This document shows, piece after piece, positions 40,660-64,000 of a DNA stretch of 64,000 bases (positions within the stretch are counted from its first letter, which is position 1; each line of letters starts with the position of its first letter). The translations under genes were made by a program, and so were the position numbers. The DNA is from Octopus sinensis (taxonomy: Eukaryota), in NCBI RefSeq assembly GCF_006345805.1, contig NC_042997.1, positions 22,692,001 to 22,756,000 of the forward strand. The letters are read 5' to 3'. The notes below the pieces were generated by a model, which ran no database searches, had not been told where the DNA came from, and saw nothing but the letters and a program-made list of their open reading frames with translations.

Positions 40660-42206
40660 GTATGTGCGTGTGTACATGTTAGTGTGTCTGTGTTTGTTCC
40701 CCCAACATCGCTTGACAACCAATGCTGATGTGTTTACGTCCCCGTAACTTAGCGGTTTGGCAAAAGGGGACCAATAGAATAAGTACTAAACTTACAAAGA
40801 ATAAGTCCTGAGGTCGATTTGCTCAACTAAAGGCGGTGCTCCAGCATGGCCACAGTCCAATTGACTGAAACAAGTAAAAGAGTAAAAGAGATGCAGCTTG
40901 CCACACCTACCCTACAATGCAATTCTAAAAATAGCAATCACATCATCAAATTCTTGAATCTACAATCTAATGCATGATTAATTCAAAGCAATGTGAATTC
41001 ATATGCATTACATTTGGCAGAGTAATCTGAATGCTAAAGGGTTAAATAAGATTCTCTCTGATCATTAAGTCAGAATATTTTATGTATGCTTTTAAAAAAA
41101 TTATATCTAATTCAAGTTTATAGAAGCTAACAAAATTTTTCAAGGCATAGGAATGGCTGTGTGGTAAGTAGCTTGCTTACAAACCACATGGTTCCGGGTT
41201 CAGTCCCACTGCATGGCACCTTGGACAAGTGTCTTCTACTATAGCCTTGGGCCGACCAAAGCCTTGTCAGTGGATTTGGTAGACGGAAACTGAAAGAAGC
41301 CTGTCAATTATATATGTATATATATGTATATATGTGCGCGTGTGTATATGTTTGTGTGTCTGTGTTTGTCCCCACCAACATTGCTTGACAACCGATGCTG
41401 GTGTGTTTACGTCCCCGTAACTTAGCGGTTCGGCAAAAGAGACTGATAGAATAAGTACTAGGCTTACATAGAATAAGTCCTGGGGTCGATTTGCTCGACT
41501 GAAGGCGGTGCTCCAGCATGGCCACAGTCAAATGACTGAAACAAGTAAAGAGTAAATATGTGATAGTTTCAAACAAATGAAATATTTTGTCAATTAAACT
41601 TTAAGCAGATAAAGTTAATAGTTCAGCCATTAAAAAACTAATTATTTCACATAAACAAAATATTTTGTGTATGGGGAGAGTCATTATGCCAATATAATTG
41701 ACACATACTAGTTCAATTCCACTTCTTTATTATTAGGCAATTGGTTAAATATCCAACTAACTAATTTGTTTTGTTTTTGTTTGAAAAGGTAGCAAGTAGC
41801 AACGAAAGAACTTTGACAAGCAAAAATAAATAGAAAAATAAAAATTAGTTAGTTGGACATTTAACCAATTGATTAATGATAAAGGAGTGGAATTGAACCA
41901 GCATAATGACTCTCTCTAGACACAACAAAATTTGTTTCAACACACAAATTCACATAAAGAATCTTACAAACTAGCTACAAAAACAAAGTAAAATATTTTC
42001 TTCCTTTTTTTTAATAGTTATAATCTAAGAAAGTAAAATGAATCCATTTCACCTTATAGGTCGCTCGTCGCAGTTGGTCAGGTAATTTGAAGGCTCGAGA
42101 GACAATTAAGCTGACCATGAAGGACAACCCATGTCTTCAAGTGACGATACCATACAGCACTGAAGATGATTCCATGATTGAAAATGTACTAAAAACAGTT
42201 ACATAA
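134..42206 (+). CDS. UROC1: Urocanate hydratase (eukaryotic type), 5'-incomplete, 18 coding exons in window
   Basis: Manual splicing of exons 134-262, 2624-2685, 3590-3656, 5372-5428, 7672-7758, 11416-11567, 13272-13380, 15234-15304, 16378-16475, 19247-19355, 21529-21617, 23424-23494, 27091-27189, 30236-30335, 32999-33080, 37567-37615, 39240-39290, 42060-42206 gives 1629 nt with matching phases and GT-AG sites. Urocanase motifs: YGQMTAGSYCYIGPQGIVHGT, GLGGMSGAQAKA, GSDQTSCHNP, FWDYGNAFL, SRDHHDVSGTDSPFRETSNIYDGS, HNGGGVGWGE. Confidence 0.97.
1482..1597 (-). mobile_element. Penelope/retrozyme-like fragment with a degenerate minimal hammerhead between 29-bp inverted repeats
   Basis: Arms 1482-1510 and 1569-1597; the minus strand reads aTGATGA-A-GGCTG-gagagtattt-CAGTC-aAAA-CGT-T-GTGTT; same family as 50641-50857. 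Confidence 0.65.
2624..2685 (+). CDS. UROC1: UROC1 exon: MIPNYSSKEIYDKLFALGVT(M)
   Basis: tattag acceptor; gtgagt donor; phase 0 to 2. Confidence 0.93.
3590..3656 (+). CDS. UROC1: UROC1 exon: (M)YGQMTAGSYCYIGPQGIVHGTT
   Basis: ttccaag acceptor; gtaagt donor; highly conserved urocanase motif. Confidence 0.97.
5372..5428 (+). CDS. UROC1: UROC1 exon: LTLLNAARMYLKTDDLSGK
   Basis: ttttag acceptor; gtaaga donor; 19 codons. Confidence 0.94.
6510..6850 (-). mobile_element. Degraded R4/Dong-like (RLE-type) non-LTR retrotransposon fragment
   Basis: Minus strand gives ETGTHSVAECPKLVQGEYKKWRHDQVVKVLHWKL and a decayed KILW..IQ.DKKLEN region, typical of the zinc-knuckle/RHD/RLE C-terminus. Confidence 0.7.
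7303..7619. mobile_element. Fold-back (MITE-like) element, ~135-bp imperfect arms
   Basis: 7303-7440 is the reverse complement of about 7481-7619 (e.g. ccaaagttctttcatc / gatgaaagaactttgac); related copy at 41663-41929. Confidence 0.8.
7672..7758 (+). CDS. UROC1: UROC1 exon: VFVTSGLGGMSGAQAKAAVIAGCVGVVAE (NAD-binding motif)
   Basis: ccaacag acceptor; gtaggt donor; 29 codons. Confidence 0.97.
9244..9910 (+). repeat. Tandem array of 11 units of 61-63 bp with two unit types (A B A A A B A B A B A)
   Basis: Units start at gccagc 9251, 9312, 9374, 9436, 9498, 9559, 9621, 9682, 9745, 9806, 9867; shared core gtaaaagcacc. Confidence 0.95.
9867..10080 (+). mobile_element. RTE-type 3' tail ending in (GAT)n
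   Basis: gtaaaaagcacccactacactc..ggagtggttggcgttaggaagggcatccagc..ccaacccatgctagcatgg..(gat)n; recurs at about 15895-16092, 17640-17815, 24283-24473 and 47270-47437. Confidence 0.75.
10728..11395 (+). mobile_element. 3' fragment of an R4/Dong-like non-LTR retrotransposon with (AAT)n/(AAC)n tail
   Basis: CRLCNDRLERIDHIVAGCPVLA..YKTRRDQV..ILWDYGIHTDREINVNGPDIVIKD..LIDMTVP..KYKDL..TAHILGKFLS with frameshifts: CCHC knuckle plus PD..D endonuclease. Confidence 0.85.
11416..11567 (+). CDS. UROC1: UROC1 exon: VDKNALIKRYKQGW...IGYHGNVVDL(W)
   Basis: ttacag acceptor; gtaata donor; phase 0 to 2. Confidence 0.96.
12259..12654. mobile_element. MITE-like element with ~80-bp terminal inverted repeats enclosing (CA)n
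   Basis: 12259-12342 pairs with 12575-12654; both outer ends are CACGTG; (CA)n at about 12410-12483. Confidence 0.7.
12817..13205 (+). mobile_element. tRNA-derived bipartite SINE, family A
   Basis: Head ggcgcaggagtggctgtgtggtaag with A-box and B-box ggttcagtcc; internal (TA)n(TG)n; tail gactgaaacaagtaaa. Confidence 0.88.
13272..13380 (+). CDS. UROC1: UROC1 exon: (W)DRLITEYENTAELLVDLGSDQTSCHNPFAGGYYPMQ
   Basis: atttag acceptor; gtataa donor. Confidence 0.96.
13489..13676. mobile_element. hAT/Charlie-type MITE (188 bp)
   Basis: TIR CAGGGGTCCCCAAACT...ACTTTGGCGATCCCTG; 8-bp TSD atctatat/atctgtat. Confidence 0.85.
14001..14401 (+). mobile_element. Dimeric SINE, family B, with 12-bp TSD
   Basis: actttgcttgta at 13989-14000 and 14402-14413; head aggtggcgagctggcagaaacg; B-box gagttcaaattcc occurs in both monomers (gagttcagattc in the second). 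Confidence 0.85.
14620..14843. mobile_element. piggyBac-type MITE, family 1
   Basis: CCCTTTAGCATT...AATGCTAAAGGG with TTAA flanks; other copies at 16103-16316, 61004-61227 and partial at about 40900-41045. Confidence 0.8.
14886..15111. mobile_element. piggyBac-type MITE, family 2
   Basis: TTAA-CCCTTTCGTTAC...GTAACAAAAGTG-TTAA; second copy at 39486-39715. Confidence 0.78.
15234..15304 (+). CDS. UROC1: UROC1 exon: ITFEESQILMHEDPEKFCQLVQE(T)
   Basis: long T tract plus caacag acceptor; gtaaaa donor; phase 0 to 2. Confidence 0.92.
16378..16475 (+). CDS. UROC1: UROC1 exon: LRHHVKALNKLSDQGMFFWDYGNAFLLEADHA(G)
   Basis: taacag acceptor; gtataa donor. Confidence 0.96.
17150..17815 (+). mobile_element. 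RTE LINE ORF C-terminus plus modular 3' UTR
   Basis: Decayed GRPRKT.DKLVKNDL.TLGL.EAMT motif, repeated UTR modules, then the (GAT)n tail. Confidence 0.75.
17973..18772 (-). mobile_element. Non-autonomous Helitron (800 bp)
   Basis: Minus strand: A|TCTCTCTATATATAAA...(TGTC/TG)n...CCCGGGCAACGCCGGG hairpin, 8 nt, CTAG|T. Confidence 0.88.
19247..19355 (+). CDS. UROC1: UROC1 exon: (G)ADVGKCETMCGTKFRYPSYVQDIMGDIFSLGFGPF(R)
   Basis: attaag acceptor; gtattt donor. Confidence 0.96.
20380..21300 (+). mobile_element. Degraded maT (DD37D-type) transposase remnant interrupted by a SINE
   Basis: IWFSNEKNFC, VKLWLERFAVGRPY..WQQD, SQKWLLENFYEF, DYYVWGVVE motifs across frameshifts. Confidence 0.75.
20801..21031 (-). 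mobile_element. SINE family B with 17-bp TSD
   Basis: taatccctctgattata at 20784-20800 and 21032-21048. Confidence 0.9.
21529..21617 (+). CDS. UROC1: UROC1 exon: (R)WVCTSGDKEDLEKTDMIAASILEKIASKT
   Basis: attaag acceptor; gtaagt donor. Confidence 0.95.
23424..23494 (+). CDS. UROC1: UROC1 exon: (S)SAVVREQYKDNIRWIKEAGQHKM
   Basis: ttacag acceptor; gtatgg donor. Confidence 0.95.
23990..24200 (+). mobile_element. Penelope-like terminal remnant with degenerate minimal hammerhead (24063-24097)
   Basis: GTTT-CTGcCGA-A-GAGC-tcc-aCTC-GAAA-CaT-T-AAAC; flanked by (TA)n. Confidence 0.6.
26252..26530. repeat. 279-bp near-perfect palindrome (~137-bp arms, ~4-nt loop)
   Basis: Centre ctagcaaaaa-taat-ttttttgctag; arms pair out to attaaaat/attttaat. 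Confidence 0.92.
27091..27189 (+). CDS. UROC1: UROC1 exon: VVGSQARILYADQNGRSQIALEFNKAVKEGKLK
   Basis: atatag acceptor; gtaggt donor; 33 codons. Confidence 0.96.
27322..27473. repeat. Interrupted (TCT)n microsatellite
   Basis: Direct reading. Other long SSRs: (CT)n 4724-4813, (TACA)n 19639-19750, (AAT)n 10105-10152 and 31470-31510. Confidence 0.95.
29257..29821 (+). mobile_element. Internally deleted mariner (non-autonomous), copy 1
   Basis: TA-TTGGGTTGTCC..GGACAACCCAA-TA; retains an MEDKK start and WDVLPHPPYSPDIAPSDFHLFRSLQN. Confidence 0.92.
30236..30335 (+). CDS. UROC1: UROC1 exon: GPVVISRDHHDVSGTDSPFRETSNIYDGSALCA(D)
   Basis: ctgtag acceptor; gtaagt donor. Confidence 0.97.
30960..31265 (+). 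mobile_element. CR1-type LINE 3' fragment with (ACTA)n tail
   Basis: RRRGAFSVRVADPWNKLPDEMVKMPTTALFKASLDLKWPELFT*. Confidence 0.82.
31470..31890 (-). mobile_element. CR1-type LINE 3' fragment with (ATT)n tail
   Basis: ORF 31572-31817: SNTRGHAYKVRKQ...RKHFFTLRVAEAWNKLPASVVDCYDTASFK. Confidence 0.85.
32296..32710 (+). mobile_element. SINE family A, full length
   Basis: Same head, body and tail as 12817; preceded by a partial copy at about 32113-32270 and followed by a 3' half at about 32720-32930. Confidence 0.88.
32999..33080 (+). CDS. UROC1: UROC1 exon: (D)MAIQNVIGDSFRGATWVSIHNGGGVG(W)
   Basis: acacag acceptor; gtatgt donor. Confidence 0.97.
33985..34226 (+). mobile_element. SINE family B with 12-bp TSD
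   Basis: gattagctccta at 33973-33984 and 34227-34238. Confidence 0.88.
34807..35090 (+). mobile_element. SINE family A, 3'-truncated
   Basis: Head and internal (TG)n present; tail missing. Confidence 0.82.
35330..35745 (+). mobile_element. 5' mariner fragment cut by a Helitron
   Basis: MSVEKIAIRTILCYLWKKGLNAKVVAKEIQEV...QNWFRHFKEGNTSLEDKPRS (HTH region). Confidence 0.8.
35746..37418 (+). mobile_element. Non-autonomous Helitron (1673 bp) with internal duplications and an unidentified insert
   Basis: A|TCTATAATATAAAAG...CACGGGCAACGCCGGG, 8 nt, TTAG|T. Confidence 0.82.
37567..37615 (+). CDS. UROC1: UROC1 exon: (W)GEVTNGGFGLMLDGSD
   Basis: tcacag acceptor; gtaaat donor. Confidence 0.94.
39240..39290 (+). 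CDS. UROC1: UROC1 exon: RAENQARTMLAWDVSNG
   Basis: tgacag acceptor; gtaaga donor; 17 codons. Confidence 0.93.
39968..41556 (+). mobile_element. Cluster of three SINE family A copies (about 39968-40385, 40436-40890, 41144-41556)
   Basis: Three near-identical heads, bodies and tails in the last UROC1 intron. Confidence 0.88.
41663..41929. mobile_element. Fold-back element related to 7303-7619
   Basis: Arms about 41663-41767 and 41842-41929; shares gaaagaactttgacaa and the outer flank with the 7.3-kb copy. Confidence 0.75.
42060..42206 (+). CDS. UROC1: UROC1 terminal exon: VARRSWSGNLKARETIKLTM...ENVLKTVT*
   Basis: ttatag acceptor; TAA at 42204-42206; ATTAAA at 42239-42244 is a possible polyA signal. 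Confidence 0.96.
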   Translation, partial: VARRSWSGNLKARETIKLTMKDNPCLQVTIPYSTEDDSMIENVLKTVT

Positions 42207-42641
42207 ATCAATATTTTCTGGTTTCAACCAAAAATAGAATTAAAGAACAGAAATGTCTCTTAAAAGGAATGTTTGTTAAAATATATTGATAGTAAATCAA
42301 GATTTTTCTCAAATATGTCAAAGATAGTTTAACTAAAATCAAATTAAAAAGGAAAATGAAATTTCTCTAGTTATTGGAAATAGAAGTTGATAAATTTTCT
42401 ACTTTATTGCAAACAATATGTGTTGGCTTTATTTACATTTTGACCAAATGTTTACATGTATAATACTATAAAATGATATAGTAATATGGTTGTGTGCTTA
42501 AGATGCTAAGTTACCAACTATGCAGTTTCAGGTTCAGTCCTAATGCATGGTACCTTAGGTAAATTTCTTTTTGTAGGCTCTGGGCCTATTAAAATTTTGT
42601 GAGTGGATTTGGTAGATAGAAACTGAAAGAAGTTTATCATA

Positions 42642-44557
42642 CAGGGTGCCCATAAATTACCTTTGCAATTTGAAACATTCAGAAAAAATGAAAAATAAAG
42701 GTAACTCAACAGAGTTTATTGGAAAGCATAGGCAAACAAATAAAGTTTTATTAGAAACATCAAGGCCAAGTGGTTCTGCTTCCTCACTGAGTGAAAAGAG
42801 AGTACTCTTTAAGACATCCAGAGACTAAGCAAGAATAACTGCATCATCAGCAAAATCTAGATCTGTAATCCTAGTTTCACCAATGAGTTTACCACAACTC
42901 AATTAAGCCACCATTCAGCCAAGTATTCAATCTATGCAGGCATTCAACAAAGTGGGAGAGAAGTTGGACCCCAGATCTAAATAGGAAAAAGTCCTGATAC
43001 TGAGCCCCCAATCCAAACTGCACTAACTGTTCCAGTATACAAGGCCATCATCAACCCAATCAGTTGAGGAGATATACCTCACAGCTCTAGATTCCTCTAA
43101 AGCACATACCTATCCACTGAGTCAAACACCTTGCAGAGGTCACCATAGACTGAAAATAGCCCTGCCAAAAGCTTCATTTGCATTTAACAAGTACACAAAG
43201 AGCCATGATCCTGTCAGTTGTTGACCTCTTTTGGCATGAACCCTGACTGCTCCAACTACTGAGATGCAAGTCAATGATTTCACACTCTGTTAAGGATGAC
43301 TCTGGCAAAGACCTTACTGGGCATTGAGAAGAGTACAACAGCCCTATAGTTGTTGCAGTTGTGGATGTCACCTTTGCCTTTCCAGTGGGGATTATTATGC
43401 CTCTGATCCGGTCAGACAGTATTGTGCCACTGCTCCAGATTGAGTAGATTATCTGCCAGAAGAACAAGACTGCAGCAGGCCCACCTTTCTTGATCATTTC
43501 CCCAAGGAAGCCACAAACACCAGCCACCTTCCTGTCTTTCAGCTGATTTACTGCCATACAAACCTCTTCTTCGGATGGCAGATCACAACTGACTGGCTGG
43601 TCAGTCACCAGTGCTAAAGGTATCATGGTATTCAGCTCAGTACTATGTGGGTCCACTTAATACACTCAAACTATGATGTCCAGTGAGCTACCACCTTGGG
43701 TTCCTCCATCAGAAGTGTGCCATCAGAGTCTAAGACTCCAGTTCAGCAAGTGGGTTGCTTCACAGGATTAAGGGTTACCATTTGTTGGATTTCATATCCA
43801 ACTCTACTCAGATGTATACTGTAACATGATTCTGGAGCACCTGCGCAGGCTGCTTGGCAATGTTGTTCAATTTTCTGAGTTAGACCCTACTTACTCTTAG
43901 CTAAAAGATCCAGTTGGGTTGACTGCTTGTGCTGGTTGACCACATGCCACATGGTCATAGCAGATGAAGAGGTATCTTGCAGAGATGGAGACTGATTAGG
44001 ATTCTACTTGACAAGTCACTCAGGAGGACCCAGGAATATACAAATGGAGATTGCAGCAACACACTACAACGGTGCATTCCCCACACCTGACCTGAGAAAT
44101 ATCAGAACACTGCCACATTGACTCCATTGGTTACACACAACATGTCTAAATGATACTAAATTTCTAATCGTCAGTGTTAGAGCATCCCCTCATCAATGTT
44201 GAGTATAACTTGATGTACTTTTTCTTTGAGACTGCTGGGGTTTTGAACTTGTGTACAATAGACTTTGTCTTTAATGTAGCTCCATAAGAAGCTTAGAGGG
44301 GTTATATCTAGAGACCTAGGTGACCAAGTAACTGGGCTTCCTCTTCCAATCGACCAGTTTGGGTTAGGGTTAGTTTCATTAGGTTTCATTAAGAAACTCT
44401 TGAACACTCGACCCCAATTGGGTGGCACATCATCTTGGCGGAAAATAATTGCCGGTTGCAAGTGGCACATTTAACATGCAAAGAAGTTGATTGATGGATC
44501 TCAACTTTAATAGATACAATAAATTGTATAAGTTGTAAAGATAATTTATGGACATAC
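42642..44557 (-). mobile_element. Internally deleted Tc1/mariner element (DD41D-like remnant) enclosing an RTE segment
   Basis: TA-CAGGGTGCCCATAAATTACCTTTGCAA at 42640 pairs with tgtccataaattatctttacaa (rc of about 44533-44554); ORF 44177-44470 RQDDVPPNW..SIGRGSPVTWSPRSLDITPL.FLWSYIKDKVY. Confidence 0.7.
42770..43660 (-). mobile_element. Degraded RTE-clade reverse transcriptase segment
   Basis: KVAGVCGFLGEMIKKGG..GIIIP.GK, then ITDLDFADDAVIL and LSEEAEPLGL. Confidence 0.85.
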
Positions 44558-52889: not shown

Positions 52890-55025
52890 TTATTTCTTCA
52901 CTTTTTTTGGAGGTACACTGGCTTGTTTAACTTTTGTGACTTTTGGAGTATTTGAAGTTTGCTTGGGTGCTGCTTGCTTCAGTGCTGCTTGATTGGGTGT
53001 TTCTTTGCGTGGAGGTTGGACAGCTTTCGCTTTTTTTGATTTGTTTTTTAAGTTGGGCTTCTTTTGAACATTAAAAGGCTTTTTAGCCTGTTCCATCATT
53101 TGACGGGCTTTGGCAATATTTGACAACCGTTTTGCATTTGCAAGTATGTTCTTAACATTGTTTTGTAAAGCATTCTGAGCAATTTTCTTGGTAAGAAATT
53201 TCAAAAGCATTATTTGGTTGTTATTCGGTGACTGAGTCATGTTCATAAGAGATGATGAAATTCTATTGCTTAATTTGCTGAGTCCCAATCTTTGCACATT
53301 TAAAGTTTGTATTGCAGTCATAGATAGATTGCCAGCGAGTTTATTATTTGTTGGTAACCAAGGTTTGGGAACATCTTTTCCAACAGATCTGATGTTGCCA
53401 ATATTTCTGGCAGTTTCTCTGAGATTCAATTCTCTGTTATATGCATTATTTCCACTGCTTCTTTTGACATTGCCATATGTATTTCCAAACCCATGTGCTA
53501 AATCCATTCTGTTAACATTAACATTTTTATTGTCAATTTGGTTAAAAGACATATCGAGTGAGTTTTGGCGAATTGGTTTATTCTGAAAACTAGGTGTTTC
53601 ATTGAATTCTCTTCCAGACATTGGATGAAAATCTCTATCAAACATTTCTTCTCTTCTTTCCATTTGAAAATTTTTTTCATTTCCTGATGCATACATATAT
53701 GGCTTGTTATATTGGTCAGGTAAGCGGGAGAATTCCCTGTCATAATTTGGAACTGGGTTTCCCGCACCATATTCTTGATTAAAACCAGTACGCTCTTTCG
53801 GTGCAGCAGTGATATCACGAGAATTATACATTGATGAAGGATTAAAACCAGCTCTGTTTTGAACATTATCGTATTCATAAACAGTTCTTGAATGATAATT
53901 ATCATTAGACTCAGTTAAATCAAAACCTCTATTATTACGACTATAAGTAAAATCATCCATTTTCTCATCTGTCGCTGAGTCAAAATTTTTTCTGAAATAC
54001 CTTGAGTCATAAGTGTTTGTATCTGTTGAAAGCATGCGATCCCTTGCAGGGTTACAATCCAAATCATAAGACCTCTGACTATAACCAGGCTTTGAATGAT
54101 GAAAACTGTTATCTTGGTCATCCATAGAATTATATCTACCATCATCATTCATTGAAGATCTTTGATTGTGAGAATATAATCCTCTTTCATTATGATTAGC
54201 ATCAGAATTAATCCGATTACAAACATTTATTTCTCTTTCATAATCATCTGGAACATAGCGCCTATCATAATAGCTGGAATTTGAATTTATGTGCTTAGCA
54301 CCCATGTTTGAAATCTGTTTTGATTCCACCAAATTTACGCTTGACTTGGAAAAATTAGGATTGGAAAAATGGCGATCATAGTCTCTTTTGTTGTCAGAAT
54401 GTTTACCATAATTGTAGCCTTTATAATCATAAGGATCTTGGCTCATATTTGTGCAGGAATCACTAAGATTTTTACGAACATTCTCACTGTGTGATAATTG
54501 GTCATCTCTCCTTACAAAATTGCCATCATTATAATTTCTATAATAATCTGACATTTCATTCATGTTTCCTGTCATTTGGTTAGAAGTATTAACTCCTTTC
54601 TGATAATATTGCCATTTTGCAGATTTTAATTCAGGTATATCTGATTTCGGAACAATGCGATATTTACCACCACGTCCACCATTCTTTAGGAGATATTTTA
54701 CGATATCAGAATAGTCTTCACCAGTATGTAAAGAGAAGTAATGTCCATCTTTGTATCTTTTTTTCCGCATGAGTAAATTTTTCTTCTCACCAATTTTTTT
54801 AATCAATACAACTTGGTCACCAAAAAACCCAGGGCCAAATAAGAGTTCATTATTCAATACACTCCATGAATAGCTGTCAATCAGGTTTTCTATTACTGTA
54901 GCAAAGGGACCATCATCTGCGTATTCATCACCGGAATAAGAATTCCTTCTTCTTTTAACTTCACCAACAAGATACATTACATTTGAATAGGGAATACAGA
55001 TTTCACTTTCAACTTCTGAAGCAAC
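52890..55025 (-). CDS. NKRF-like terminal exon (711 aa): R3H-like domain, N/D/Y/R-rich low-complexity region and basic tail
   Basis: 2136-nt stop-free frame in AT-rich DNA; ttttttatacatcag acceptor; TAA at 52890; AATAAA (rc of 52845-52850) about 40 nt downstream. Confidence 0.92.
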   Translation of the reverse strand, partial: VASEVESEICIPYSNVMYLVGEVKRRRNSYSGDEYADDGPFATVIENLIDSYSWSVLNNELLFGPGFFGDQVVLIKKIGEKKNLLMRKKRYKDGHYFSLHTGEDYSDIVKYLLKNGGRGGKYRIVPKSDIPELKSAKWQYYQKGVNTSNQMTGNMNEMSDYYRNYNDGNFVRRDDQLSHSENVRKNLSDSCTNMSQDPYDYKGYNYGKHSDNKRDYDRHFSNPNFSKSSVNLVESKQISNMGAKHINSNSSYYDRRYVPDDYEREINVCNRINSDANHNERGLYSHNQRSSMNDDGRYNSMDDQDNSFHHSKPGYSQRSYDLDCNPARDRMLSTDTNTYDSRYFRKNFDSATDEKMDDFTYSRNNRGFDLTESNDNYHSRTVYEYDNVQNRAGFNPSSMYNSRDITAAPKERTGFNQEYGAGNPVPNYDREFSRLPDQYNKPYMYASGNEKNFQMERREEMFDRDFHPMSGREFNETPSFQNKPIRQNSLDMSFNQIDNKNVNVNRMDLAHGFGNTYGNVKRSSGNNAYNRELNLRETARNIGNIRSVGKDVPKPWLPTNNKLAGNLSMTAIQTLNVQRLGLSKLSNRISSSLMNMTQSPNNNQIMLLKFLTKKIAQNALQNNVKNILANAKRLSNIAKARQMMEQAKKPFNVQKKPNLKNKSKKAKAVQPPRKETPNQAALKQAAPKQTSNTPKVTKVKQASVPPKKVKK

Positions 55026-58000
55026 CTGATGTATAAAAAATATAATATACACACACATTTAAATATAAGTAGCATAGAAAAATAGACATTAAAATAATAA
55101 TAATAATAATAATGACGATTATGAGGAGGAGGATATGAATATTTGAAAGGTAACCTCTTTTGTCTCAATGATCATAGAAAATTTTCTATATTCCTATTGA
55201 GTTTAATATCTTAGGGAAAAACTACACGCTGCAAAAATGCTTTATGTGGTGAAATCTATAACCAGCTGTCATCCAACATATGGCCAGGGAAAACTGGGAA
55301 GCAGTTCATTCATATGTATACATAAGGCCTCATAATTCATAGACTCAAAATCTAGAAAAGTGTTCATTATATATTATACACATATATAAAAACTATACAT
55401 CAAGTACAGGAACACTGCATAGAATTGAAAGAGAGCATCACTTCATGCAGAAGAATGTTGCAACATGTAGACAAATCAAAGGACACTGTAGATGGAGTAG
55501 TTATTTCAAAGATTCCTAAAGATGAAAGGACAAGTTTTCAAGGAGCTGCATAATCACCCCAACAGATTTGACAAAACAATTGTCTTTTGGCTTATTCTTA
55601 AGTTCATGTATACATTAACCCTGCAACTAAGATAACAACAAAAAGCACTCCTCAATCAAAAGACACACCAGTGTCAAGAAATCATAAAGAGTTTGACAAA
55701 GCATTCTTGATACACTTCATTAAGAAATTAAAGTAAACTTTTTAAAAGTAGAAGAGAGCTGAAATTATATAGATATATATTTGCTTTCACTTCACAAAGC
55801 AATAAAGATGTATCATTAAATTAAAGAATATCCTGAAAGCATCCATTGCTTTGCTTCCCAATGATAAAATGTTTTTGCATTGTAGTAAAGCTTTATTGAG
55901 TATTTGCATTCTTTAAAACTGCAACCACTTCAGTTTATATATCTCCAAACATGTCATGAGATACACCAACTATTCAAACATATCAAGAAATGAAATAGCT
56001 GACAATGAATTCTGAGGGAGGAAATTAATATACTTTATAAATCCTATGTTAAAAGTCCCAAATTGTACAGAAATCAAATAAAAAAGATATCAACAATGTA
56101 TAGTAACATCTACACCACTCAACTTTTAAAACATCATTTGAAAATGACTGATTTGATGTTTAACTAAGTCATTGACATAAAAAATGTTATCCTTATAAAT
56201 AGTATAAATATGTTTAAAAAGAAAATACACATTAAAATATAAATGACTTGTCAGTGTTAATGAATAACACATGCTAGAACATAGACTAAGCAAACTAGAG
56301 AGCTACAAACCAGACAGAATGCAATGAAAGAGTGTTAAGTGTAAGTAACAGTAAGAGATATGCAACAAACTTGGAAAGGATTGCAAAAATGGAATGAGCA
56401 AATGCATACCCTTTTAATTCCAGCCTATTGGTGATACAGAAATTTGAATATCTAAAGAAAACAAAGTTCTAAGTCATAATGATGAGAGAGTATAAAGTAT
56501 TATAAATTATGAGCTATTAGAGAGAAGTTTGAAAATTATACAGATGGAATAGTTTTCAGTGGCAATGATAAATACTGAATGGAATAGAGACAGAGTCTAA
56601 CACAATGCAACTAACAGGTGCTAGCTACAAAAAACAATCAGGAGTTAAGTACAGCAATTAAGGATATGAAAACAAAGAAAGCTTTAACCCTTCATGAGTG
56701 GTCAGTGAGATACCAAAGAGAATAAATTGACATATATCACATCTATCACTCCAAGATTGAATGTATCAAGTTATGAAGATATAAGAAATATAGCAAAACT
56801 AGCATTATGACCCAGCATTGCCGGGTCATAGTGCTAGTTTGATATAAATTTGTTAAATTAAAAATTTGGGTTAATAAAACATACAATGACATATAAAATG
56901 TCGAATTAAAATTCCAGAGAAAAATACATAGAAGATAAACATACAAATTTACAAAAATACATAAAAGTTCATCTACGGGCTGTTTCGGAGGTGCACCAAT
57001 TAATATGAAACATATCATATATTTAAAATTGACACTCCCCTCGTCAGGATGTTTTTTACACACAACACATAGTACACGGAAACAAATCCACATTTACATA
57101 CCGGCTATATGCGAAAGACCAGACATTATGTACTCCCCAAAATTTTCATAGATACTGAATGCTACTTTATAAGCATATAATTCAATCTAGCAGCTATAGT
57201 AAATGGTATGCGCACAGCTCCATCTGGACTAATTCACTTCTGCACCCAATTAAATTTTTCATCTTTTAATTTCTCCCATTCATGCAAAGCCACATATTCG
57301 AGTTCAAGTCCTTGATACATTTTATACTAATTGCTATTTTTTCTTTTAATTGTTATATTACGATTTAATTACCATTTTAATAAAATAAAATATATTTAAT
57401 TACTACTTACTATATTTAATTCAATTGTTATTATTACCTCTAACTTTTATTGCAATTTTTATTTCTAAATTTCTTATGGAACGTCGAGTGGATCTTATGC
57501 GTACAATATATTTTTATATGATGTTTATATATTACTATATATTTCTAAATGTCGGGCTTTATGTCTGTTCTGTAGATATAAATGAATATATGAATATATG
57601 TATGTGTTTGATCTTTCTGTGGATTTTGTAGTGCTCTTGTAGTTGCTGCTCGCATTGCCTCCCCTCGGATTAAAAAGTGTATACAGCTCATTGGAACACT
57701 ACTATTCCAGTCTGTTATATATTTTGAGCGTTGTTGTCACTAACAATCTCAAGATATAACTTTATATTTTGTAATATATATATATATATATACATCCATA
57801 TACAATAGAGAGATATTTTTGTTTCACTTTTAACACGTAATACTGAAATAGTGGAGAAGATATGATATTGCTGTGGGCTCGCTCTAGGCAAGAAGTTAAA
57901 CATTTTTTTTTGCCCATGACACTACATGGACTCTAAGTAAGGCATGTGCAAAATTTGAATGAAATTGGTTGTGTAGTTCTCAAGTTTTGGGGAAACACAC

Positions 58001-61000
58001 AGACAGACACACATTCTCAGTTTTATATATAGAGAGATTAACACAAGATAATTAGTTGGGTTGGATTAGATGAAATAAAACTCAGTTAAGAGCAAATGGT
58101 TTTGCATTTAGTGCTCTAAAGAAAGTTGAGTGTAGTAGAATGATTTTTTAAAATCATTTAGTCTATCTTAATGATTATACTGAAAGCCAAGTTAAGGAAC
58201 ACTTAGACACTTGGTAATAAAGGATTTGAACAGTTCTAAACTAAATATCAAGTTCTTATTGCAAAACCATCATCATTTTTATGTCTGTCTTTTCCATGCT
58301 GACAAAGCTTCTCGAGAGATCCTATGGCCAAATGCCATTCCTGACATTCGCCACTGGTGGACAAACATGCATATATGAGCTTTTGTACAGTTTCCACACT
58401 ACCTAATTTCACTTACAAAGCATGGCCAGCATGATGATAGAAGATACTTGCCCAAGGGACCTTACAATGAGATTGCCCCTAAAACCACATGGCTTTGAAG
58501 TGTTAACTACATAGCCATGCTTGTTCCTTTAATAAATTTACAAAAATGTTGGAAGAGCAAAAATTGTTATTCAATCTAACTAAGCAGAAACAAAGAAATC
58601 AGTGTAAACAACAGGTATAATAAAGAGACAATGGAAAACTGACAAGGTACTATAAAATTATGAGCAGATATGCATTCAATTAGCAGAAGAATCAACTCCG
58701 GAATATTCAGAAGACTAGTTACCAAAGAAAATAGACTGACACTCAAGTGAAATAAATGTATGCTGGTGATGGATGTAAGGACAATAGCTCGAAAAAAAAT
58801 AGATCTTAGAACTTCTTCACAAATGTGATCTTGTACTGCAAATTTATATGCTAGAACAGGGAGATGTCAAATTTTGAAATTACTACAAAACAAAAAAAAA
58901 ATCGACAGCTCATTATAGATATCCATTGGCACATACAATGAACAGCATTAATTTGAGCATTTGATGAAAAGAGATGATGATTTGGTAGGTTGAATTGAAA
59001 TAGTATCTATTTCAAGTGAATTTCTCTGATTAGAAAAATGAACATTAAAAACTAGTAATAACAGAATTTATTACCTGAAGGATGACATTATTTTTGTAAA
59101 AATACTTGAAGAGTGCATCACAAGCAGCATGTTTCTTAGCATCAGGTTTTGTGGTACCACGTCCGGTTCCCACAAGTTTTTCCTGTACATATACACTCAT
59201 CCTGAAAATGAAATAAATAATACAAGTAGAAATAAATATAATATGGAGTATGTGATGTAATCAATAAATTATTTTTATAGTAACAAGCCAAAACTATTAA
59301 AGAAAATATTTTTCAAGAGTATGCAATAGTTGGGCAAAATTTAGGCAGATATAGATGCTATGAAAACTTTAGACACTAGACAGACTATGTTACTGGATGA
59401 ATAAATATTACCATAGCTATGTGGAATTAGTGCTTTGCATTAACTCACTGAAAAGCAGAGTTAAATAAGTAATAACCTATGACATGGAGGGTTATATATA
59501 AGGCTTGCAAATTGCATTAAAATTTATAGACCTTGCCTTGAAATGTGGGTTGAGTGAACTCAGAGACAATAAGTAAAGGAAGTTTATTAAAGTTAAAAAT
59601 AGGACAACAGGGTATGGAGTAGCTTGTATAAAAGCAGCTTTCTTTTGACAAATATCCATTCTAGATCCTGATGGCGACTATTGTGGAGTTAGACAAGGTG
59701 AACTTAGCCACTTTATGATATTCCTGATTCTTTGAAATTCATTAGAAGTAATTAGGTACACAGTACATAACTTTGGCATTGTATAACAAATATCATCACT
59801 ATCATCATTAATTTCAATTTTCCTTTCCAAGCTTGCATGGGCTGGACAGGTCATCATGATCCATGTCTATTCATTCCTCTCCTAGACAGATTGAGGACCA
59901 CATCACACTTGGACATTCCATTTTTGACACAGCTCATACATTGGATGCCCTTCCTAAATTCAACCACTTTACAAACTATACTGGATGCACAGCACTAGAG
60001 ATTTCTCTTGTCTTTGGCAAGACTAAGTCATCTCTACCCTATGTTGCTTCTATTCATTCAAAGTAACAATTTAGAGTGTTAAAGGAGAGAGCCAGGGCAA
60101 GAGAGTAAAGAGAACCAGAGTAATAGAAATAAGGAGATTAAAAAAAAGGGAATAATGGAGGAGATAATGATACAATATCTCTATACATCAGTTGCTGGTA
60201 TGGAGACTGAATAGAAAAACAGTATTTGTAGCTAGATGGGGAGGAAGAGAGAATGATAGGAAGAATACACAATGGTGGAAGAAGTAATAAAAGTGTGAAT
60301 AATGTATTGCTATATAATGTGTAGTGCAGTGTTAGAATGTCAGCACACTCTGTACATATTCTCTGTTATATAGCCTGATGAAGTTTTAGTATGCTTGATA
60401 TCATAAGAATAATCAAAACTTTGGTTTTAAACAAAAGGGTGTGTGTGTATGTGTGTGGTTAAGAAGCTTACTTCCCAACCATGTGGTCATGGGTTCCGTC
60501 CTACTGCACAGCACCTTGGGCAAGTGCCTTCTACTATAACCCAAAGCCTTGTTAGAGGATTTAATACATGGAAACTGAAAGAAGCCCATTGTGTGTGCAT
60601 GTGTATTATGTATATATATATATATATATATACATACATGTTCATATGTATGTACCCTTGCCTAGGCATCATGTGATGGTTGTATATGATTATCTAACAA
60701 GCAAGATGATTAGTTTTTATTTTCTCAAGAAAAACATATCTAACTATGGGAAAATATTACCTTGCTTGAAAGCATGTGAAGGTAGGTGACAAGAAGGGCA
60801 TCTAAACATAGAAAATTGGTCTCAATAAATTCCGTCTGCCCCATGCAACAGTGAACATTAGGTGACAATGATGATCATAATATATACATATATCAAAATT
60901 AATTGAACAATGCCACAGTATGTAATGTACAAGTCAAAATGTTTTCTTTCCATGAACAAAGGTTCCTTAAAGGTACATTCTGTTAATATTTGAGTTTTAT

Positions 61001-64000
61001 TTTTTAACCCTTCAGCATTCACATTATTTTGTCAAAAGTAATGCTTATTCATTCACATTGTTTTGAATTAATTACACATTATCTTGTAGCTTTGAGATTT
61101 TGATGAGGTAACTTTTTTTAGAATGATATTGTAGGGGTGGTATGAGAAACCAGATCTGGCCAGCTTGAACATAAAACAGGTACAATATTTCAGCCAGATA
61201 TGGCTGGTTTAAATGCTAAAGGGTTAAGATTATAATTTTATCGGTACATTTTTGTTGTTTGATGCAAAAAACCCCATGAAAATTGAATAAAACAGAGAAT
61301 CATAAAAGCATGCTCTTTCACAACCTCTCTCATTCAAATTTGACGCACACAAACAACACACTGTAATCAAGCGGCAACATGCTATGTCAAAGACCTGTCC
61401 AACACATGGAAGTATAGAATAACTGATGTAGAAATAGTGGGCGACGGAGGTTGGAATGTACATTTATTTGATCTACCATCACCCTTTATCACATCACACC
61501 AGTAGTATAATGAGGGAAAACACTGGGTTTGACTATATTCAATCTCCCCAACCTTAACTTTTTTATATCAACAGTCATCACTCACTCTCTCTTTATCACC
61601 ACCCATCTTTACTACTATAAACCGTGGATTTTTTTTTTTTTACTTGCTGGATGTGGAGGAAGGAACAGTACTCAAAATTTTACAAACACTCCTAGATTAG
61701 TAAGACTGATACTACTAATGCTCCTCTTGAACTTTTCGAAAGTCAACAACTACTGGAAAAATTTGACTAAGAAAGGAGTTGCTAGAGGGCTAACATTTGA
61801 GATGGAAGGATTGGAAATAGTGATTTGTGCAGGATCTATCCCATAACAATTATTTTGGATGTATACACCTAAAGAAAAGAGTACATAATTCATTCTCTTG
61901 AAAACAAAATATGATTGTTCAGTTGTGCTTGCATTAGCTTTGATTTTAACATAAAGCAATCTTCAAAGAGGGAAAGAGAGAGAGAGAGCATGTTCAGTTT
62001 ATACTGAATGACATAATAGTCCAGTGGCTGACTACATTATCTTTCTAACTTGAGCTTTAACACAAAGCTATACTATTTATATACATGGTGCATAAGATAT
62101 TTGAGAACATACCTTTTTCAGGTCATTGCTGCATTTTTTGCTAACTCTGTATAATCTTTGTTTCAGAAAATAATAATGGTAGACCCTCAGCTTAATCAAG
62201 AAAGGAAGTGGATGTTGTTATAAAGGCTGAGCATAGTGATTTAGAAATATCTCAATTTTTAAAAGTTGCCAGATGTTTCATCTACAAAGTTCGTAAGGAG
62301 CTAGAGACTGAAGATGGAAATGTATCACCAGTATCAAAGCATAAAAAGCATTCTAAACACTCTGAAATCATCAGAACACTTGAATTTATCCAGCAAGATC
62401 AACAGACCAGAAAGTCCATGAGGTCAATTGCAAAAGATTTCTCTGTGTCAGAAGGACAATCAGAAATGTTGTCCACGGAGACATCAGATATGTTTTATAT
62501 GATGAGGAAAGGTCAATTTATCATAAAAAGCAAAAGGAAATCACTACAACAGATCTAAAAGGCTCTTAAACAAACTGAAAATTCCAGTAGATTTGATTTG
62601 GTTTTTCTCAAGAAAAACGCCAACCAAGATCAAAAAGTTAACAGAAGAAATGACAGATAGTTGTGTAGACCCTTCTGAACTTCCAAGTGTTATGCATACC
62701 TAATTTCCTGCAACTGTCATGGTTTTATTGGTTGTCAGCAATGAAGGACATGTAATACCTCCTTACTTCTTTCTACAAGGCCTTATAGTTAACTCTGCTG
62801 CCTACATTGAGGTCCTGAAAATAATTGTTAAGCCCTGGATAGACAGTGTATGCAATGGAAGGCCATATGTATTTCAGTAAGACTCTGTACTATCACACAT
62901 GGCTCTAGTAACACAAGAATGGATGGCTGAAAATTTTCATGATCACACAGCCCCTAACATTTGGCCTCTTAATTCCCCAGATTTCAATCTAGTGGACTAT
63001 ATGTGCAGCATTGTTAAGAGAGAGGTCAATGAGCACACCCATAACACCAAAGATTCTTTGAAAGCAGCCATAGTCAGAGTAATGTCCAAAATGAACCAGG
63101 ACCACTTGATTCGAGCATGTAGATGATTTAGATCTCATATAGAAGCAGATGTTGAAGCTGAAGATGGCTTTATTGAATAACATTATAGAAAAGAAGGTTT
63201 ATTATCCTCATAGCATTTTTTGATAAATAAAGTTATGTTATTTTATGTTTTTTTATACACATAAATCTGTCCTCAAATATCTTACGCACCGTCTGTCTGT
63301 ATGTATATATATACATACACACACAAATACCAAATCCCATTTCTTCAACATAATGCAATGTCTATCATTATTTATGGCTTTGAATTATAGTAAATGTTTC
63401 TCCAAACTGAAATTTTTCCATTTCTATCATCTGTAATTTAATTCCATTTTTATTAATTGGAAACCTGAATTCCATCACTTCCTTTACTAGTTTTGTTGTT
63501 GTTATTTCTCAAAAATATATTAAAAATAATGTACACTTCTGTGTTGTACAAACAAAATTTGTCATTTTAGCATCTTTCCAATGCTGGCATGGACTGACTG
63601 GTTTTCACTACCCATTATGATTCCAAATAATCTCATCCATGAGTCGGGTCATTAATCACAGATCTGGCATCATTACTTCCCTCCACATCTACTGAATATG
63701 TCTTCCCCTGTCATCATGTAACATATTTTCACTCAACACTCATTATACATTTACAATACGTGCACACAAGCATAGTAATTTCTCTCTTACATACATGAAT
63801 TATAATAGAAAGTGCCTTACTTGTGTGTACCCAGTTCAACAGCATGATCCCATTTTATTTTCATTTTGTTAGCTACCACACTGTTGTGAAGTATAGATAC
63901 CGAGAATTTGAAACGATCTGATGCAAACAAATCTGATTCTATAATAACAAGTTCAGAAATAGATTTATTTCTAGTTAACAGTATGGCTGGTTTATTTGGT
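52890..64000 (-). CDS. NKRF-like dsRBD/R3H-like RNA-binding protein, 5'-incomplete, 3 exons in window
   Basis: Exons 63821->64000, 59075-59201 and 52890-55025 splice in frame (aa|g = K, then phase 0). The joined protein KSISELVIIES...SVSILHNSVVANKMKIKWDHAVELGTHKMSVYVQEKLVGTGRGTTKPDAKKHAACDAL has dsRBD-type architecture. It is followed by FATVIENLIDSY...ELLFGPGF...DIVKYLLKNGGRGGKYRIVP, which resembles the NKRF C-terminal R3H region. Family call from memory. Confidence 0.8.
56799..58037 (-). mobile_element. Non-autonomous Helitron (1239 bp) in an NKRF-like intron
   Basis: Minus strand: A|TCTCTCTATATATAAAACTGAG...TATGACCCGGCAATGCTGGGTCATA hairpin, ATG, CTAG|T. Confidence 0.85.
59075..59201 (-). 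CDS. NKRF-like exon: (K)MSVYVQEKLVGTGRGTTKPDAKKHAACDALFKYFYKNNVILQ, C-terminal half of a dsRBD
   Basis: tcattttcag acceptor; gtaata donor; GxGxG-T-K-x-x-A-K-x-x-AA-x-x-AL dsRBD signature. Confidence 0.9.
62083..63292 (+). mobile_element. Near full-length decayed maT (DD37D) transposon
   Basis: TIR ggtgcataagatatttgag / ctcaaatatcttacgcacc; VKPWIDSVCNGRPYVFQ*D-(37 aa)-DY spacing counted. Confidence 0.87.
63821..64000 (-). CDS. NKRF-like exon, partial: PNKPAILLTRNKSISELVIIESDLFASDRFKFSVSILHNSVVANKMKIKWDHAVELGTH(K)
   Basis: Stop-free to the window edge; gtaagg donor (rc of 63815-63820); its phase 2 end matches the phase of the next exon. Confidence 0.85.

What the first reader, a model, noticed from the sequence alone, without database searches (positions are those of the whole stretch)
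52890..64000. NKRF-like protein that appears to have lost its G-patch and the R-x3-H signature
Seen: three in-frame exons encode a dsRBD-type domain. About 48 residues later comes a segment with the shape of the NKRF C-terminal R3H region (FATVIENLIDSY..ELLFGPGF..IKKIGEKKNL..DIVKYLLKNGGRGGKYRIVP, 54905-54648). Established: in NKRF a G-patch (NIGxxLLxKMGWxxGxGLG) lies between the last dsRBD and R3H and activates the DEAH helicase DHX15. Here no such motif exists, the gap is about one G-patch shorter, and the region lies inside one exon, so a missed exon cannot supply it. By alignment from memory, ERKQIH reads QVVLIK (R to V, H to K). Inference: a lineage-specific NKRF paralog or a rewired ortholog that binds dsRNA but cannot engage DHX15. 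That is notable if this is a cephalopod with extensive dsRNA editing.
Basis: partly seen in the sequence, partly recalled or inferred. Interest (0 to 1): 0.75.

Follow-up and report, generated by a model that had tools for sequence, protein, structure and literature searches.

The report
Octopod NKRF-like gene lacking G-patch
The window holds the 3' two-thirds of an intact octopod gene whose protein is a strongly diverged relative of the RNA-processing factor NKRF: it keeps an NKRF-type double-stranded-RNA-binding domain and a degenerate R3H module but has no G-patch, the piece NKRF uses to switch on the helicase DHX15. It is a modest, lineage-restricted variant of a known protein rather than a new kind of system.

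Summary
Three in-frame minus-strand coding exons (63999-63821, cut by the window end; 59201-59075; 55025-52890) give one open frame.

**Homology to NKRF.** The first two exons encode a dsRBD that matches vertebrate NKRF dsRBD1 (hhalign 94%, E 1e-7). About 48 residues later, 54905-54648 aligns end to end with the NKRF R3H domain plus its C-terminal tail. That match is weak for the window alone (E 0.18-0.35). It is clear for the Argonauta hians orthologue (BLASTP 4e-6, HMM 2.5e-5, hhalign 8e-5).

**Fold.** An AlphaFold model built without any NKRF sequence gives an R3H-like alpha-beta-alpha-beta-beta-alpha order. Its Foldseek matches to solved R3H domains are weak.

**What is missing.** R and H of R-x3-H are Val and Lys in all three octopod sequences, yet the module is under purifying selection (dN/dS 0.15). 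No G-patch was found in the protein, the introns or the Argonauta locus. No XTBD and no second NKRF-type dsRBD were found either. A roughly 580-residue tail has been added: low-complexity sequence, then a conserved helix and a Lys-rich end.

**Open questions.** Only octopod homologues were retrieved. Orthologue versus paralogue, dsRNA binding and loss of DHX15 coupling remain untested. New variant of a known kind; moderate-low interest.

The parts
63821..63999 (-). 3' end (60 codons) of the first coding exon, cut by the window end. It encodes the N-terminal half of the NKRF-type dsRBD (...SISELVIIESDLFASDRFKFSVSILHNSVVANKMKIKWDHAVELGTH-K). The donor is AA|gtaagg.
   Evidence: P0002 residues 184-243, 57% identity; NKRF dsRBD1 HMM, E 0.022; P0125 is the whole exon-1 ORF in a close octopus.
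59202..63820 (-). Intron 1 (4.6 kb). It carries DDE/mariner-like transposase remnants on the + strand at 62208-63126.
   Evidence: No G-patch or XTBD match in any frame.
59075..59201 (-). Coding exon 2: the C-terminal half of the dsRBD (MSVYVQEKLVGTGRGTTKPDAKKHAACDALFKYFYKNNVILQ).
   Evidence: Pfam dsrm 20.7-22 bits, cut-off 23; BLASTP against NKRF, E 2e-6; E 1.5e-4; hhalign 94%.
55026..59074 (-). Intron 2 (4.0 kb). It lies between the dsRBD and the linker/R3H-like region.
   Evidence: No G-patch-like ORF in it.
52890..55025 (-). Terminal coding exon (711 codons plus stop at 52892-52890).
54906..55025 (-). Conserved 40-residue linker (VASEVESEICIPYSNVMYLVGEVKRRR...). The model gives a short strand plus a helix. 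It takes the place of the NKRF linker plus G-patch but is about 42 residues shorter.
   Evidence: 75% identity to Argonauta; pLDDT about 80-86; no match to the NKRF linker or G-patch HMMs.
54648..54905 (-). Degenerate R3H-like module plus an NKRF-type C-terminal tail (FATVIENLIDSY ... GGKYRIVP).
   Evidence: homology to NKRF R3H plus tail; alpha-beta-alpha-beta-beta-alpha model; weak Foldseek matches to the R3H structures 2lrr, 1msz and 2cpm; dN/dS 0.15.
54798..54812 (-). Position of the R-x3-H signature, here V-V-L-I-K. Val (54812-54810) replaces Arg and Lys (54800-54798) replaces His.
   Evidence: alignments; V72 and K76 invariant in the three octopod sequences; R648 and H652 invariant in 18 vertebrate NKRFs.
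53220..54647 (-). N/S/D/R/Y-rich low-complexity region of about 475 residues. It has no counterpart in NKRF, which ends right after the R3H tail.
   Evidence: 20-57% identity to Argonauta, many indels; dN/dS 0.35; composition; no Pfam family.
52893..53219 (-). Conserved C-terminal helix-like segment (NQIMLLKFLTKKIAQNALQNNVKNILANAKRLSNIAKA...) followed by a Lys-rich basic tail.
   Evidence: The function is inferred only.

Best explanation
**What it is.** This is the 3' two-thirds of an intact, selectively constrained octopod gene. RefSeq naming carried over to Argonauta calls it 'uncharacterized protein LOC115217295'. It encodes a strongly diverged NKRF-family protein of roughly 1,000 residues.

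**Shown here.**
- It retains one NKRF-type dsRBD.
- After a conserved 48-residue spacer it retains the NKRF R3H module with its family-specific C-terminal tail.
- It has no G-patch.
- The R3H signature Arg and His are Val and Lys.
- No XTBD is detectable.
- A long low-complexity region plus a basic C-terminus has been added.

**Inferred mechanism.**
- The protein still binds structured RNA through its dsRBD(s). Part of the KK-x-A-type helix motif survives as AKKHAA.
- Its R3H-like module is kept as a folded interaction or scaffold surface. It is probably no longer a canonical site for single-stranded nucleic acid or a 5'-phosphate.
- The N/D/R/Y-rich and Lys-rich tail supplies nuclear or nucleolar targeting, or condensate-type multivalency.
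- Without the G-patch brace it cannot tether and activate DHX15 as NKRF does. Without an XTBD it would not recruit XRN2.

It would therefore be an RNA-binding derivative of NKRF uncoupled from the helicase/exonuclease machine. Whether it is the octopod orthologue or an extra paralogue is not resolved.
For: **Gene structure and intact frame.**. The Argonauta hians gene has the same three exons and the same neighbour, urocanase.

**NKRF homology.**
- BLASTP of Argonauta P0002 against NKRF P0005 gives two colinear HSPs: R3H plus tail at E 4e-6 and the dsRBD at E 2e-5.
- The window dsRBD against NKRF gives E 2e-6.
- HMMs built from 39 vertebrate NKRFs hit exactly these exons among 4,060 six-frame segments.
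- hhalign gives 94% (E 1e-7) for the dsRBD and 61% (E 8e-5, 80 columns reaching the NKRF C-terminus) for R3H plus tail.
- In the shuffle control, 0 of 3,000 shuffles reached the real score for either species.

**Fold.** AlphaFold2 on the octopod-only alignment gives pLDDT 76-89 over residues 11-100, with an alpha-beta-alpha-beta-beta-alpha order. R3H structures appear among the Foldseek hits: 2lrr with TM 0.65 and rmsd 2.6 A over 61 columns, then 1msz, 2cpm and PARN.

**Absences.** No G-patch, XTBD or Pfam R3H.

**Selection.** dN/dS is 0.15 for the R3H-like module against 0.35-0.46 for the tail. The module is also the most conserved block, at 62-82% identity.

**G-patch requirement.** The G-patch is required for DHX15 binding and activation; the L559E mutant abolishes binding (PMC7132122; PMC5435916).
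Against: - The R3H-region match of the window sequence by itself is weak: E 0.18-0.35 and 13.7 bits against a best shuffle of 13.6.
- hhalign probability for that region is only 61%.
- No Foldseek hit is significant (best E 0.26).
- Pfam finds no R3H, and dsrm is just under threshold.
- There is no RNA evidence for splicing. The related Logan contigs are genomic.
- A conserved acceptor sits 2 nt upstream of the ATG of the first coding exon in two species. An upstream exon therefore exists, and a far-upstream XTBD exon cannot be excluded.
- No biochemical property was tested.
Confidence: 0.55

Rival explanations
1. It is a lineage-specific paralogue. Octopods keep a canonical NKRF (XTBD, two dsRBDs, G-patch, R3H) elsewhere in the genome. 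This copy was freed from the ribosome-biogenesis role, shed the G-patch and XTBD, and evolved quickly towards a new RNA-binding function.
For: - Only octopod sequences were retrieved by an exhaustive HMMER scan of 1.84 billion representatives and by the word-indexed search.
- Divergence is fast: 71% identity in the best block and about 51% overall between two octopods. Vertebrate NKRF is slow by comparison.
- A protostome (shrimp) gene is published as an NKRF homologue. Its domain composition was not read here.
Against: - No second NKRF-like gene could be looked for, because no cephalopod genome is searchable with these tools.
- The top 120 hits of the NKRF search were all vertebrate, and the remaining hits were not visible.
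- Several animal lineages are thought to lack NKRF altogether (my own knowledge, not tested here), so retention is not obligatory.
Confidence: 0.45
2. It is the sole, rewired orthologue. The cephalopod (or octopod) NKRF gene itself lost the G-patch, XTBD and one dsRBD, so the NKRF-DHX15-XRN2 module is absent or built differently in these animals.
For: - The domain order is colinear with NKRF. The match runs to the very C-terminus of NKRF.
- The spacing is shortened by almost exactly one G-patch: 48 residues against roughly 90.
- The remnant is under purifying selection.
Against: The limits are the same as for the paralogue reading. There is no phylogeny with other lophotrochozoan NKRFs. No squid or cuttlefish orthologue was retrieved, which an orthologue of an old gene might be expected to have.
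Confidence: 0.4
3. It is not related to NKRF. It is an unrelated dsRBD protein whose downstream region only resembles R3H by chance. For example, HYFSLHTGEDYSDIVKYLLKNGG looks like half an ankyrin repeat.
For: - Pfam gives no R3H hit.
- The best PDB sequence matches of the region are ankyrin-repeat stretches: 7ptx_A at E 0.05-1 and P0004 at E 1e-3.
- Foldseek finds nothing significant.
Against: - Two independent modules match NKRF in the right order.
- The dsRBD carries the NKRF-specific ILNNSA-x-NKM-x-IE motif.
- The R3H-region match spans 80 columns to the end of NKRF and beats all 3,000 shuffles.
- Pfam finds no Ank family.
- The model puts GHYFSLH in a beta-strand of a three-stranded sheet.
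- A single half-repeat cannot form an ankyrin fold.
Confidence: 0.12

Closest known systems
NKRF (NF-kappa-B-repressing factor; vertebrate, e.g. P0005, which is 99% identical to the human sequence)
   Same: - NKRF-type dsRBD with the IL-N/H-NS-x-x-x-NKM-x-I motif.
- R3H-type module introduced by the IE-x-(I/L)-I-x-x-Y helix.
- The family-specific tail after R3H (G-x-x-G-x-Y-x-(L/I)-V-x-P).
- The same order along the chain.
   Different: - No G-patch (NKRF 567-608 in P0005).
- No XTBD detected.
- One NKRF-type dsRBD instead of two.
- R-x3-H is replaced by V-x3-K.
- About 580 extra C-terminal residues.
- It evolves fast and is found only in octopods so far.
Generic R3H domains (Pfam PF01424; Smubp-2 1msz/2lrr, SPAG7 2cpm, PARN)
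   Same: The predicted alpha-beta-alpha-beta-beta-alpha order and size agree. Target-normalised TM is 0.56-0.65 to three solved R3H domains.
   Different: It fails the Pfam model and lacks both signature residues. The Foldseek E-values are not significant.
CDKN2AIP/CARF and other XTBD-dsRBD proteins
   Same: They are metazoan nuclear proteins that combine a dsRBD of a similar type with disordered regions (PMC10511037).
   Different: They have an XTBD and no R3H. No XTBD was found here. A direct comparison with CDKN2AIP was not run.

Membership tests
NKRF | NKRF-type dsRBD (homologous to NKRF dsRBD1/2) | tested here: met
   hhalign 94%, E 1e-7. BLASTP E 2e-6. The NKRF dsRBD1 HMM hits both window exons.
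NKRF | Two tandem NKRF-type dsRBDs | tested here: not met
   Only one was found. The upstream conserved domain (P0002 residues 75-170) did not match any NKRF region. Its model has pLDDT 36, with an alpha-beta-beta-beta-alpha order only as a hint.
NKRF | G-patch between the last dsRBD and R3H (DHX15 activator) | tested here: not met
   No Pfam G-patch in exon c or in P0002. The NKRF G-patch HMM and a G-patch regex found nothing in any frame of the gene, its introns or the Argonauta locus. The spacer is about 42 residues shorter than in NKRF.
NKRF | R3H domain followed by the NKRF-specific C-terminal tail | tested here: met
   BLASTP 4e-6 (Argonauta). HMM 2.5e-5 (Argonauta) and 0.18 (window) over model positions 7-86 of 91. 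hhalign E 8e-5. 0 of 3,000 shuffles reach the real score. The match is weak for the window alone.
NKRF | N-terminal XTBD (XRN2 binding) | tested here: inconclusive
   No Pfam XTBD in the full Argonauta model. No NKRF-XTBD HMM hit in six frames of the locus, including 10 kb upstream. However, a conserved splice acceptor sits directly before the ATG, so an unseen upstream exon exists. The window itself ends inside the first coding exon.
NKRF | Forms the DHX15-XRN2 pre-rRNA processing complex | not testable with these tools
   This needs biochemistry. The prediction from PMC7132122 and PMC5435916 is that it does not.
R3H domain (PF01424) | Passes the Pfam R3H model | tested here: not met
   No hit at E up to 10 for the window exon, P0001 or P0002. 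NKRF P0005 scores 49.5 bits.
R3H domain (PF01424) | Conserved Arg and His spaced by three residues | tested here: not met
   V72 and K76 of exon c (54812-54810 and 54800-54798) are invariant in the three octopod sequences.
R3H domain (PF01424) | R3H fold (three-stranded sheet packed against two helices) | tested here: inconclusive
   The AF2 topology fits and pLDDT is 76-89 in the core. Foldseek lists 2lrr, 1msz and 2cpm with TM 0.56-0.65 but E of 0.65 or worse.
dsRBD (PF00035) | Passes the Pfam dsrm gathering score | tested here: not met
   20.7-22.0 bits against a cut-off of 23, covering only the C-terminal half. Vertebrate NKRF dsRBDs are themselves marginal (28.9 bits).
Ankyrin repeat | Tandem 33-residue helix-turn-helix repeats recognised by Ank models | tested here: not met
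   No Pfam Ank hit. There is a single half-repeat-like stretch only, and it is modelled as strand plus helix.

The most novel reading that the evidence does not exclude
Octopods, or coleoids more widely, have no canonical NKRF, and this G-patch-less, XTBD-less, R3H-degenerate protein is its only descendant. In that case the metazoan NKRF-DHX15-XRN2 pre-rRNA module has been dismantled or rebuilt in this lineage. Its RNA-binding core would have been redeployed, with a new low-complexity tail, as a dsRNA-binding factor in animals with exceptionally heavy A-to-I editing.
Probability: 0.15. Interest if true: 0.6.

Novelty: new variant of a known kind. Interest (0 to 1): 0.33.

Why it matters
NKRF is defined functionally by its G-patch, which braces and activates DHX15, and by its XTBD, which recruits XRN2.

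This gene is a conserved natural derivative. It keeps only the RNA-binding core, and that core lacks the R3H signature residues but is still under purifying selection. That makes it a natural separation-of-function allele. It could show what the NKRF dsRBD and R3H-plus-tail modules do on their own, and it shows that the R3H scaffold can be maintained without R-x3-H.

It also gives a family assignment to a gene currently labelled 'uncharacterized' in octopod annotations.

The wider significance depends on whether a canonical NKRF coexists in the genome, and that is unknown. This applies to any rewiring of ribosome biogenesis and to any link with RNA editing.

Tried and rejected
- **Word-indexed homologue search with the spliced 188-residue query.** No hit. 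The index apparently lacks these octopod proteins.
- **Pfam on exon c, the spliced fragment, P0001 and P0002.** Only a sub-threshold dsrm. DUF5824, Cupiennin and DUF3860 were rejected as noise.
- **PDB sequence searches.** These returned only a marginal RNase III dsRBD (2na2) and chance ankyrin-like stretches in a spider toxin chain (7ptx_A) and in TCR chains. All were rejected.
- **P0003 (E 6e-16, 15 stretches) and P0004 (ankyrin array) from the exhaustive scan.** Their scores are inflated by repeats, so they were rejected.
- **Third homologue search with the octopod profile at E up to 10.** It returned only P0125, the exon-1 ORF of a close octopus. No squid, other mollusc or other invertebrate was found.
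- **The NKRF query.** It validated my recalled human sequence (99% identical to P0005) but listed only vertebrates in the visible top 120.
- **NKRF 'mid', dsRBD2, linker and XTBD HMMs against the loci, and hhalign of the N-terminal domain against NKRF.** No convincing match.
- **AF2 of the exon-1 product.** pLDDT 36, so it is unusable and was not sent to Foldseek.
- **Exact look-up of the window's 722-aa ORF.** Not on record, so the species was not identified beyond octopod.
- **Literature searches for NKRF in cephalopods, molluscs or oysters.** Nothing relevant. Only a shrimp NKRF is mentioned.
Full report
**1. What is in the sequence**

The region is AT-rich eukaryotic DNA. On the minus strand, three pieces join in frame.

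- Exon a is 63999-63821. It ends ...ACA CAC AA|gtaagg, leaving two bases of a codon.
- Exon b is 59201-59075. Its acceptor is ttttcag|G and its donor is CTT CAG|gtaata.
- Exon c is 55025-52890. Its acceptor is catcag|GTT, and the stop codon is at 52892-52890.
- The spliced product is open for 812 codons.

An exhaustive HMMER scan of 1.84 billion representative proteins with exon c residues 1-162 found only two real relatives.

- P0001 is an ORF from Logan assemblies, 91% identical, from another octopus.
- P0002 is Argonauta hians GAB1597554.1, 'uncharacterized protein LOC115217295 isoform X1', 907 aa, 71% identical.

The Argonauta locus (L001) has the same three coding exons, covering residues 1-243, 243-286 and 287-907. 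It also has the same downstream neighbour, urocanase. Urocanase exons lie on the + strand of the window at about 13.3 kb and 37.5-42.2 kb.

Exon a is therefore only the last 60 codons of a first coding exon of about 243 codons that runs off the window. P0125 is that exon's complete ORF in a close octopus. The window comes from an octopod.

**2. The dsRBD**

Pfam dsrm matches the exon b product at 20.7-22 bits, just below the cut-off of 23.

It proved 99% identical to a database NKRF (P0005), so every later comparison uses real sequences.

- BLASTP of the spliced window fragment against P0005 aligns SVSILHNSVVANKMKIKW...AKKHAACDALFKYFYK with NKRF dsRBD1 (AIGILNNSASFNKMSIEY...) at E 2e-6.
- An HMM of dsRBD1 from 39 vertebrate NKRFs hits both window exons among 4,060 six-frame segments, at E 1.5e-4 and 0.022.
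- Profile-profile comparison gives 94% probability, E 1e-7, over 84 columns.
- dsRBD1 matches better than dsRBD2.

**3. The R3H-like region**

FATVIENL starts 48 residues after the dsRBD, and the segment is exactly 54905-54648. Pfam finds no R3H in it. Taken alone, the window sequence matches NKRF only weakly: BLASTP E 0.35 and NKRF R3H-plus-tail HMM E 0.18.

The Argonauta orthologue makes the case.

- BLASTP residues 329-413 against NKRF 621-705 gives E 4e-6, colinear with the dsRBD match.
- The HMM gives E 2.5e-5 over model positions 7-86 of 91, the same span as in the window.
- hhalign of the three octopod sequences against 18 NKRFs gives E 8e-5, 61% probability and 80 columns running to the NKRF C-terminus.
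- Neither species' real score was reached by any of 3,000 shuffles. The scores were 13.7 bits against a best shuffle of 13.6 for the window, and 27.1 against 14.1 for Argonauta.

AlphaFold2 was run on the octopod-only alignment, so no NKRF information entered the model.

- It gives pLDDT 76-89 for residues 11-100.
- The secondary-structure order is helix 40-51, strand 61-63, helix 70-81, strands 85-91 and 94-100, then helix 106-115. This is the order expected for an R3H domain with its leading helix.
- Foldseek against the PDB finds nothing significant (best E 0.26).
- Solved R3H domains do appear in the top 50: 2lrr (probability 0.77, target TM 0.65, rmsd 2.6 A over 61 columns), 1msz (TM 0.63), 2cpm (TM 0.56) and PARN 2a1s.

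I take the fold as probable, not proven.

**4. Signature and G-patch**

hhalign and an independent MAFFT alignment both put NKRF N-D-E-R-K-Q-I-H opposite window G-D-Q-V-V-L-I-K and Argonauta N-D-E-V-A-L-V-K.

- Arg is replaced by Val (54812-54810) and His by Lys (54800-54798).
- Both replacements are invariant in the three octopod sequences.
- R648 and H652 are invariant in 18 vertebrate NKRFs.

In P0005, Pfam places the G-patch at 567-608 and R3H at 619-675. In the window the corresponding spacer is about 42 residues shorter. No G-patch was found by any route.

- Pfam found none in exon c or in full-length P0002.
- An NKRF G-patch HMM found none in all six frames of the window and of the Argonauta locus. 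The best hit was 10 bits at 705-568, 52 kb away.
- A G-patch regular expression found none either.

These scans matter because intron 2 (55026-59074) does lie between the dsRBD and the linker.

**5. Further differences from NKRF**

- No XTBD was detected in P0002, or in six frames of L001 including 10 kb upstream.
- A conserved acceptor sits two bases before the ATG of the first coding exon in both a close octopus and Argonauta...ttgcag|AT ATG and ...ttttag|AT ATG. An upstream exon therefore exists, whether UTR or coding.
- The conserved N-terminal domain (P0002 residues 75-170) did not match any NKRF region. Its model was too poor to use (pLDDT 36).
- NKRF ends just after the R3H tail. Here about 475 residues follow that are rich in N, S, D, R and Y. 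After them come a conserved helix-like segment and a Lys-rich end.

**6. Is it functional?**

The frame is intact in both species. Against Argonauta, dN/dS differs by region, with dS near 1.

| Region of exon c | dN/dS |
|---|---|
| R3H-like module | 0.15 |
| Low-complexity region | 0.35 |
| C-terminal part | 0.46 |

The linker and R3H-like block is the best conserved part of the protein, at 62-82% identity. The degenerate module is therefore maintained by selection. No transcript evidence was available. The Logan contigs that carry P0001 and P0125 include intron sequence.

**7. Interpretation**

*Shown.* This is an octopod gene for an NKRF-family derivative with a dsRBD and a degenerate R3H plus tail, and without a G-patch.

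*Established elsewhere.* The NKRF G-patch is the brace that binds and activates DHX15, and a single brace-helix mutation abolishes binding (PMC7132122). NKRF recruits XRN2 and acts in 5'ETS processing (PMC5435916; PMC10511037).

*Inferred.*
- The protein binds structured RNA.
- It cannot activate DHX15 through a G-patch.
- It probably does not recruit XRN2.
- Its R3H-like module serves as a conserved scaffold or interaction surface rather than a canonical binding site for single-stranded nucleic acid.
- The added tail directs localisation or multivalent assembly.

*Not resolved.* Orthologue versus paralogue remains open. Only octopod homologues were retrieved, and no cephalopod genome could be searched. 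The visible part of the NKRF search was all vertebrate. The literature search found only a shrimp NKRF and nothing for cephalopods.

**8. Verdict**

The gene is a new variant of a known kind, the NKRF family. It is currently annotated only as 'uncharacterized', and its interest is moderate to low unless it proves to be the sole NKRF descendant in cephalopods.

Noticed in passing
window 62208-63126 (+), inside intron 1: Three broken ORFs look like a decayed Tc1/mariner-type DDE transposase. Pfam DDE_3 matches 62899-63126 at E 1e-3, which is below threshold.
   Followed up: partly
window about 13300-13386, 37552-37633, 39225-39311 and 42027-42224 (+): These are urocanase exons. Pfam Urocanase gives E 4e-6, and tblastx matches the Argonauta urocanase gene. 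The gene is convergent with the NKRF-like gene, the same neighbourhood as in Argonauta hians, with about 10.6 kb between the two 3' ends.
   Followed up: partly
window 9244-9911: A GC-rich tandem array (62-bp unit, about 10.8 copies, 85-90% matches; higher-order periods of 123 and 247 bp). It produces long spurious ORFs in several frames and a local GC peak of 0.45.
   Followed up: partly
L002 674-676 and L001 9999-10001 (outside the window): A conserved splice acceptor (polypyrimidine tract plus ag) lies 2 nt before the start ATG of the first coding exon in two octopods. This implies an unannotated upstream exon.
   Followed up: partly
window 43174-43656 (-): A 160-aa ORF resembles a retroelement polyprotein fragment. 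It has no Pfam hit.
   Followed up: no
L001 about 8600-9000 (+), upstream of the Argonauta gene: Translated frames contain reverse-transcriptase-like strings (for example ...YRGIKLPEHAMKV...). This suggests a LINE fragment in the intergenic region.
   Followed up: no
window 54725-54657 (exon c residues 101-123): TGEDYSDIVKYLLKNGG mimics the ankyrin-repeat consensus closely enough to pull ankyrin arrays out of large databases (P0004, 7ptx_A). I judged this a chance resemblance.
   Followed up: yes
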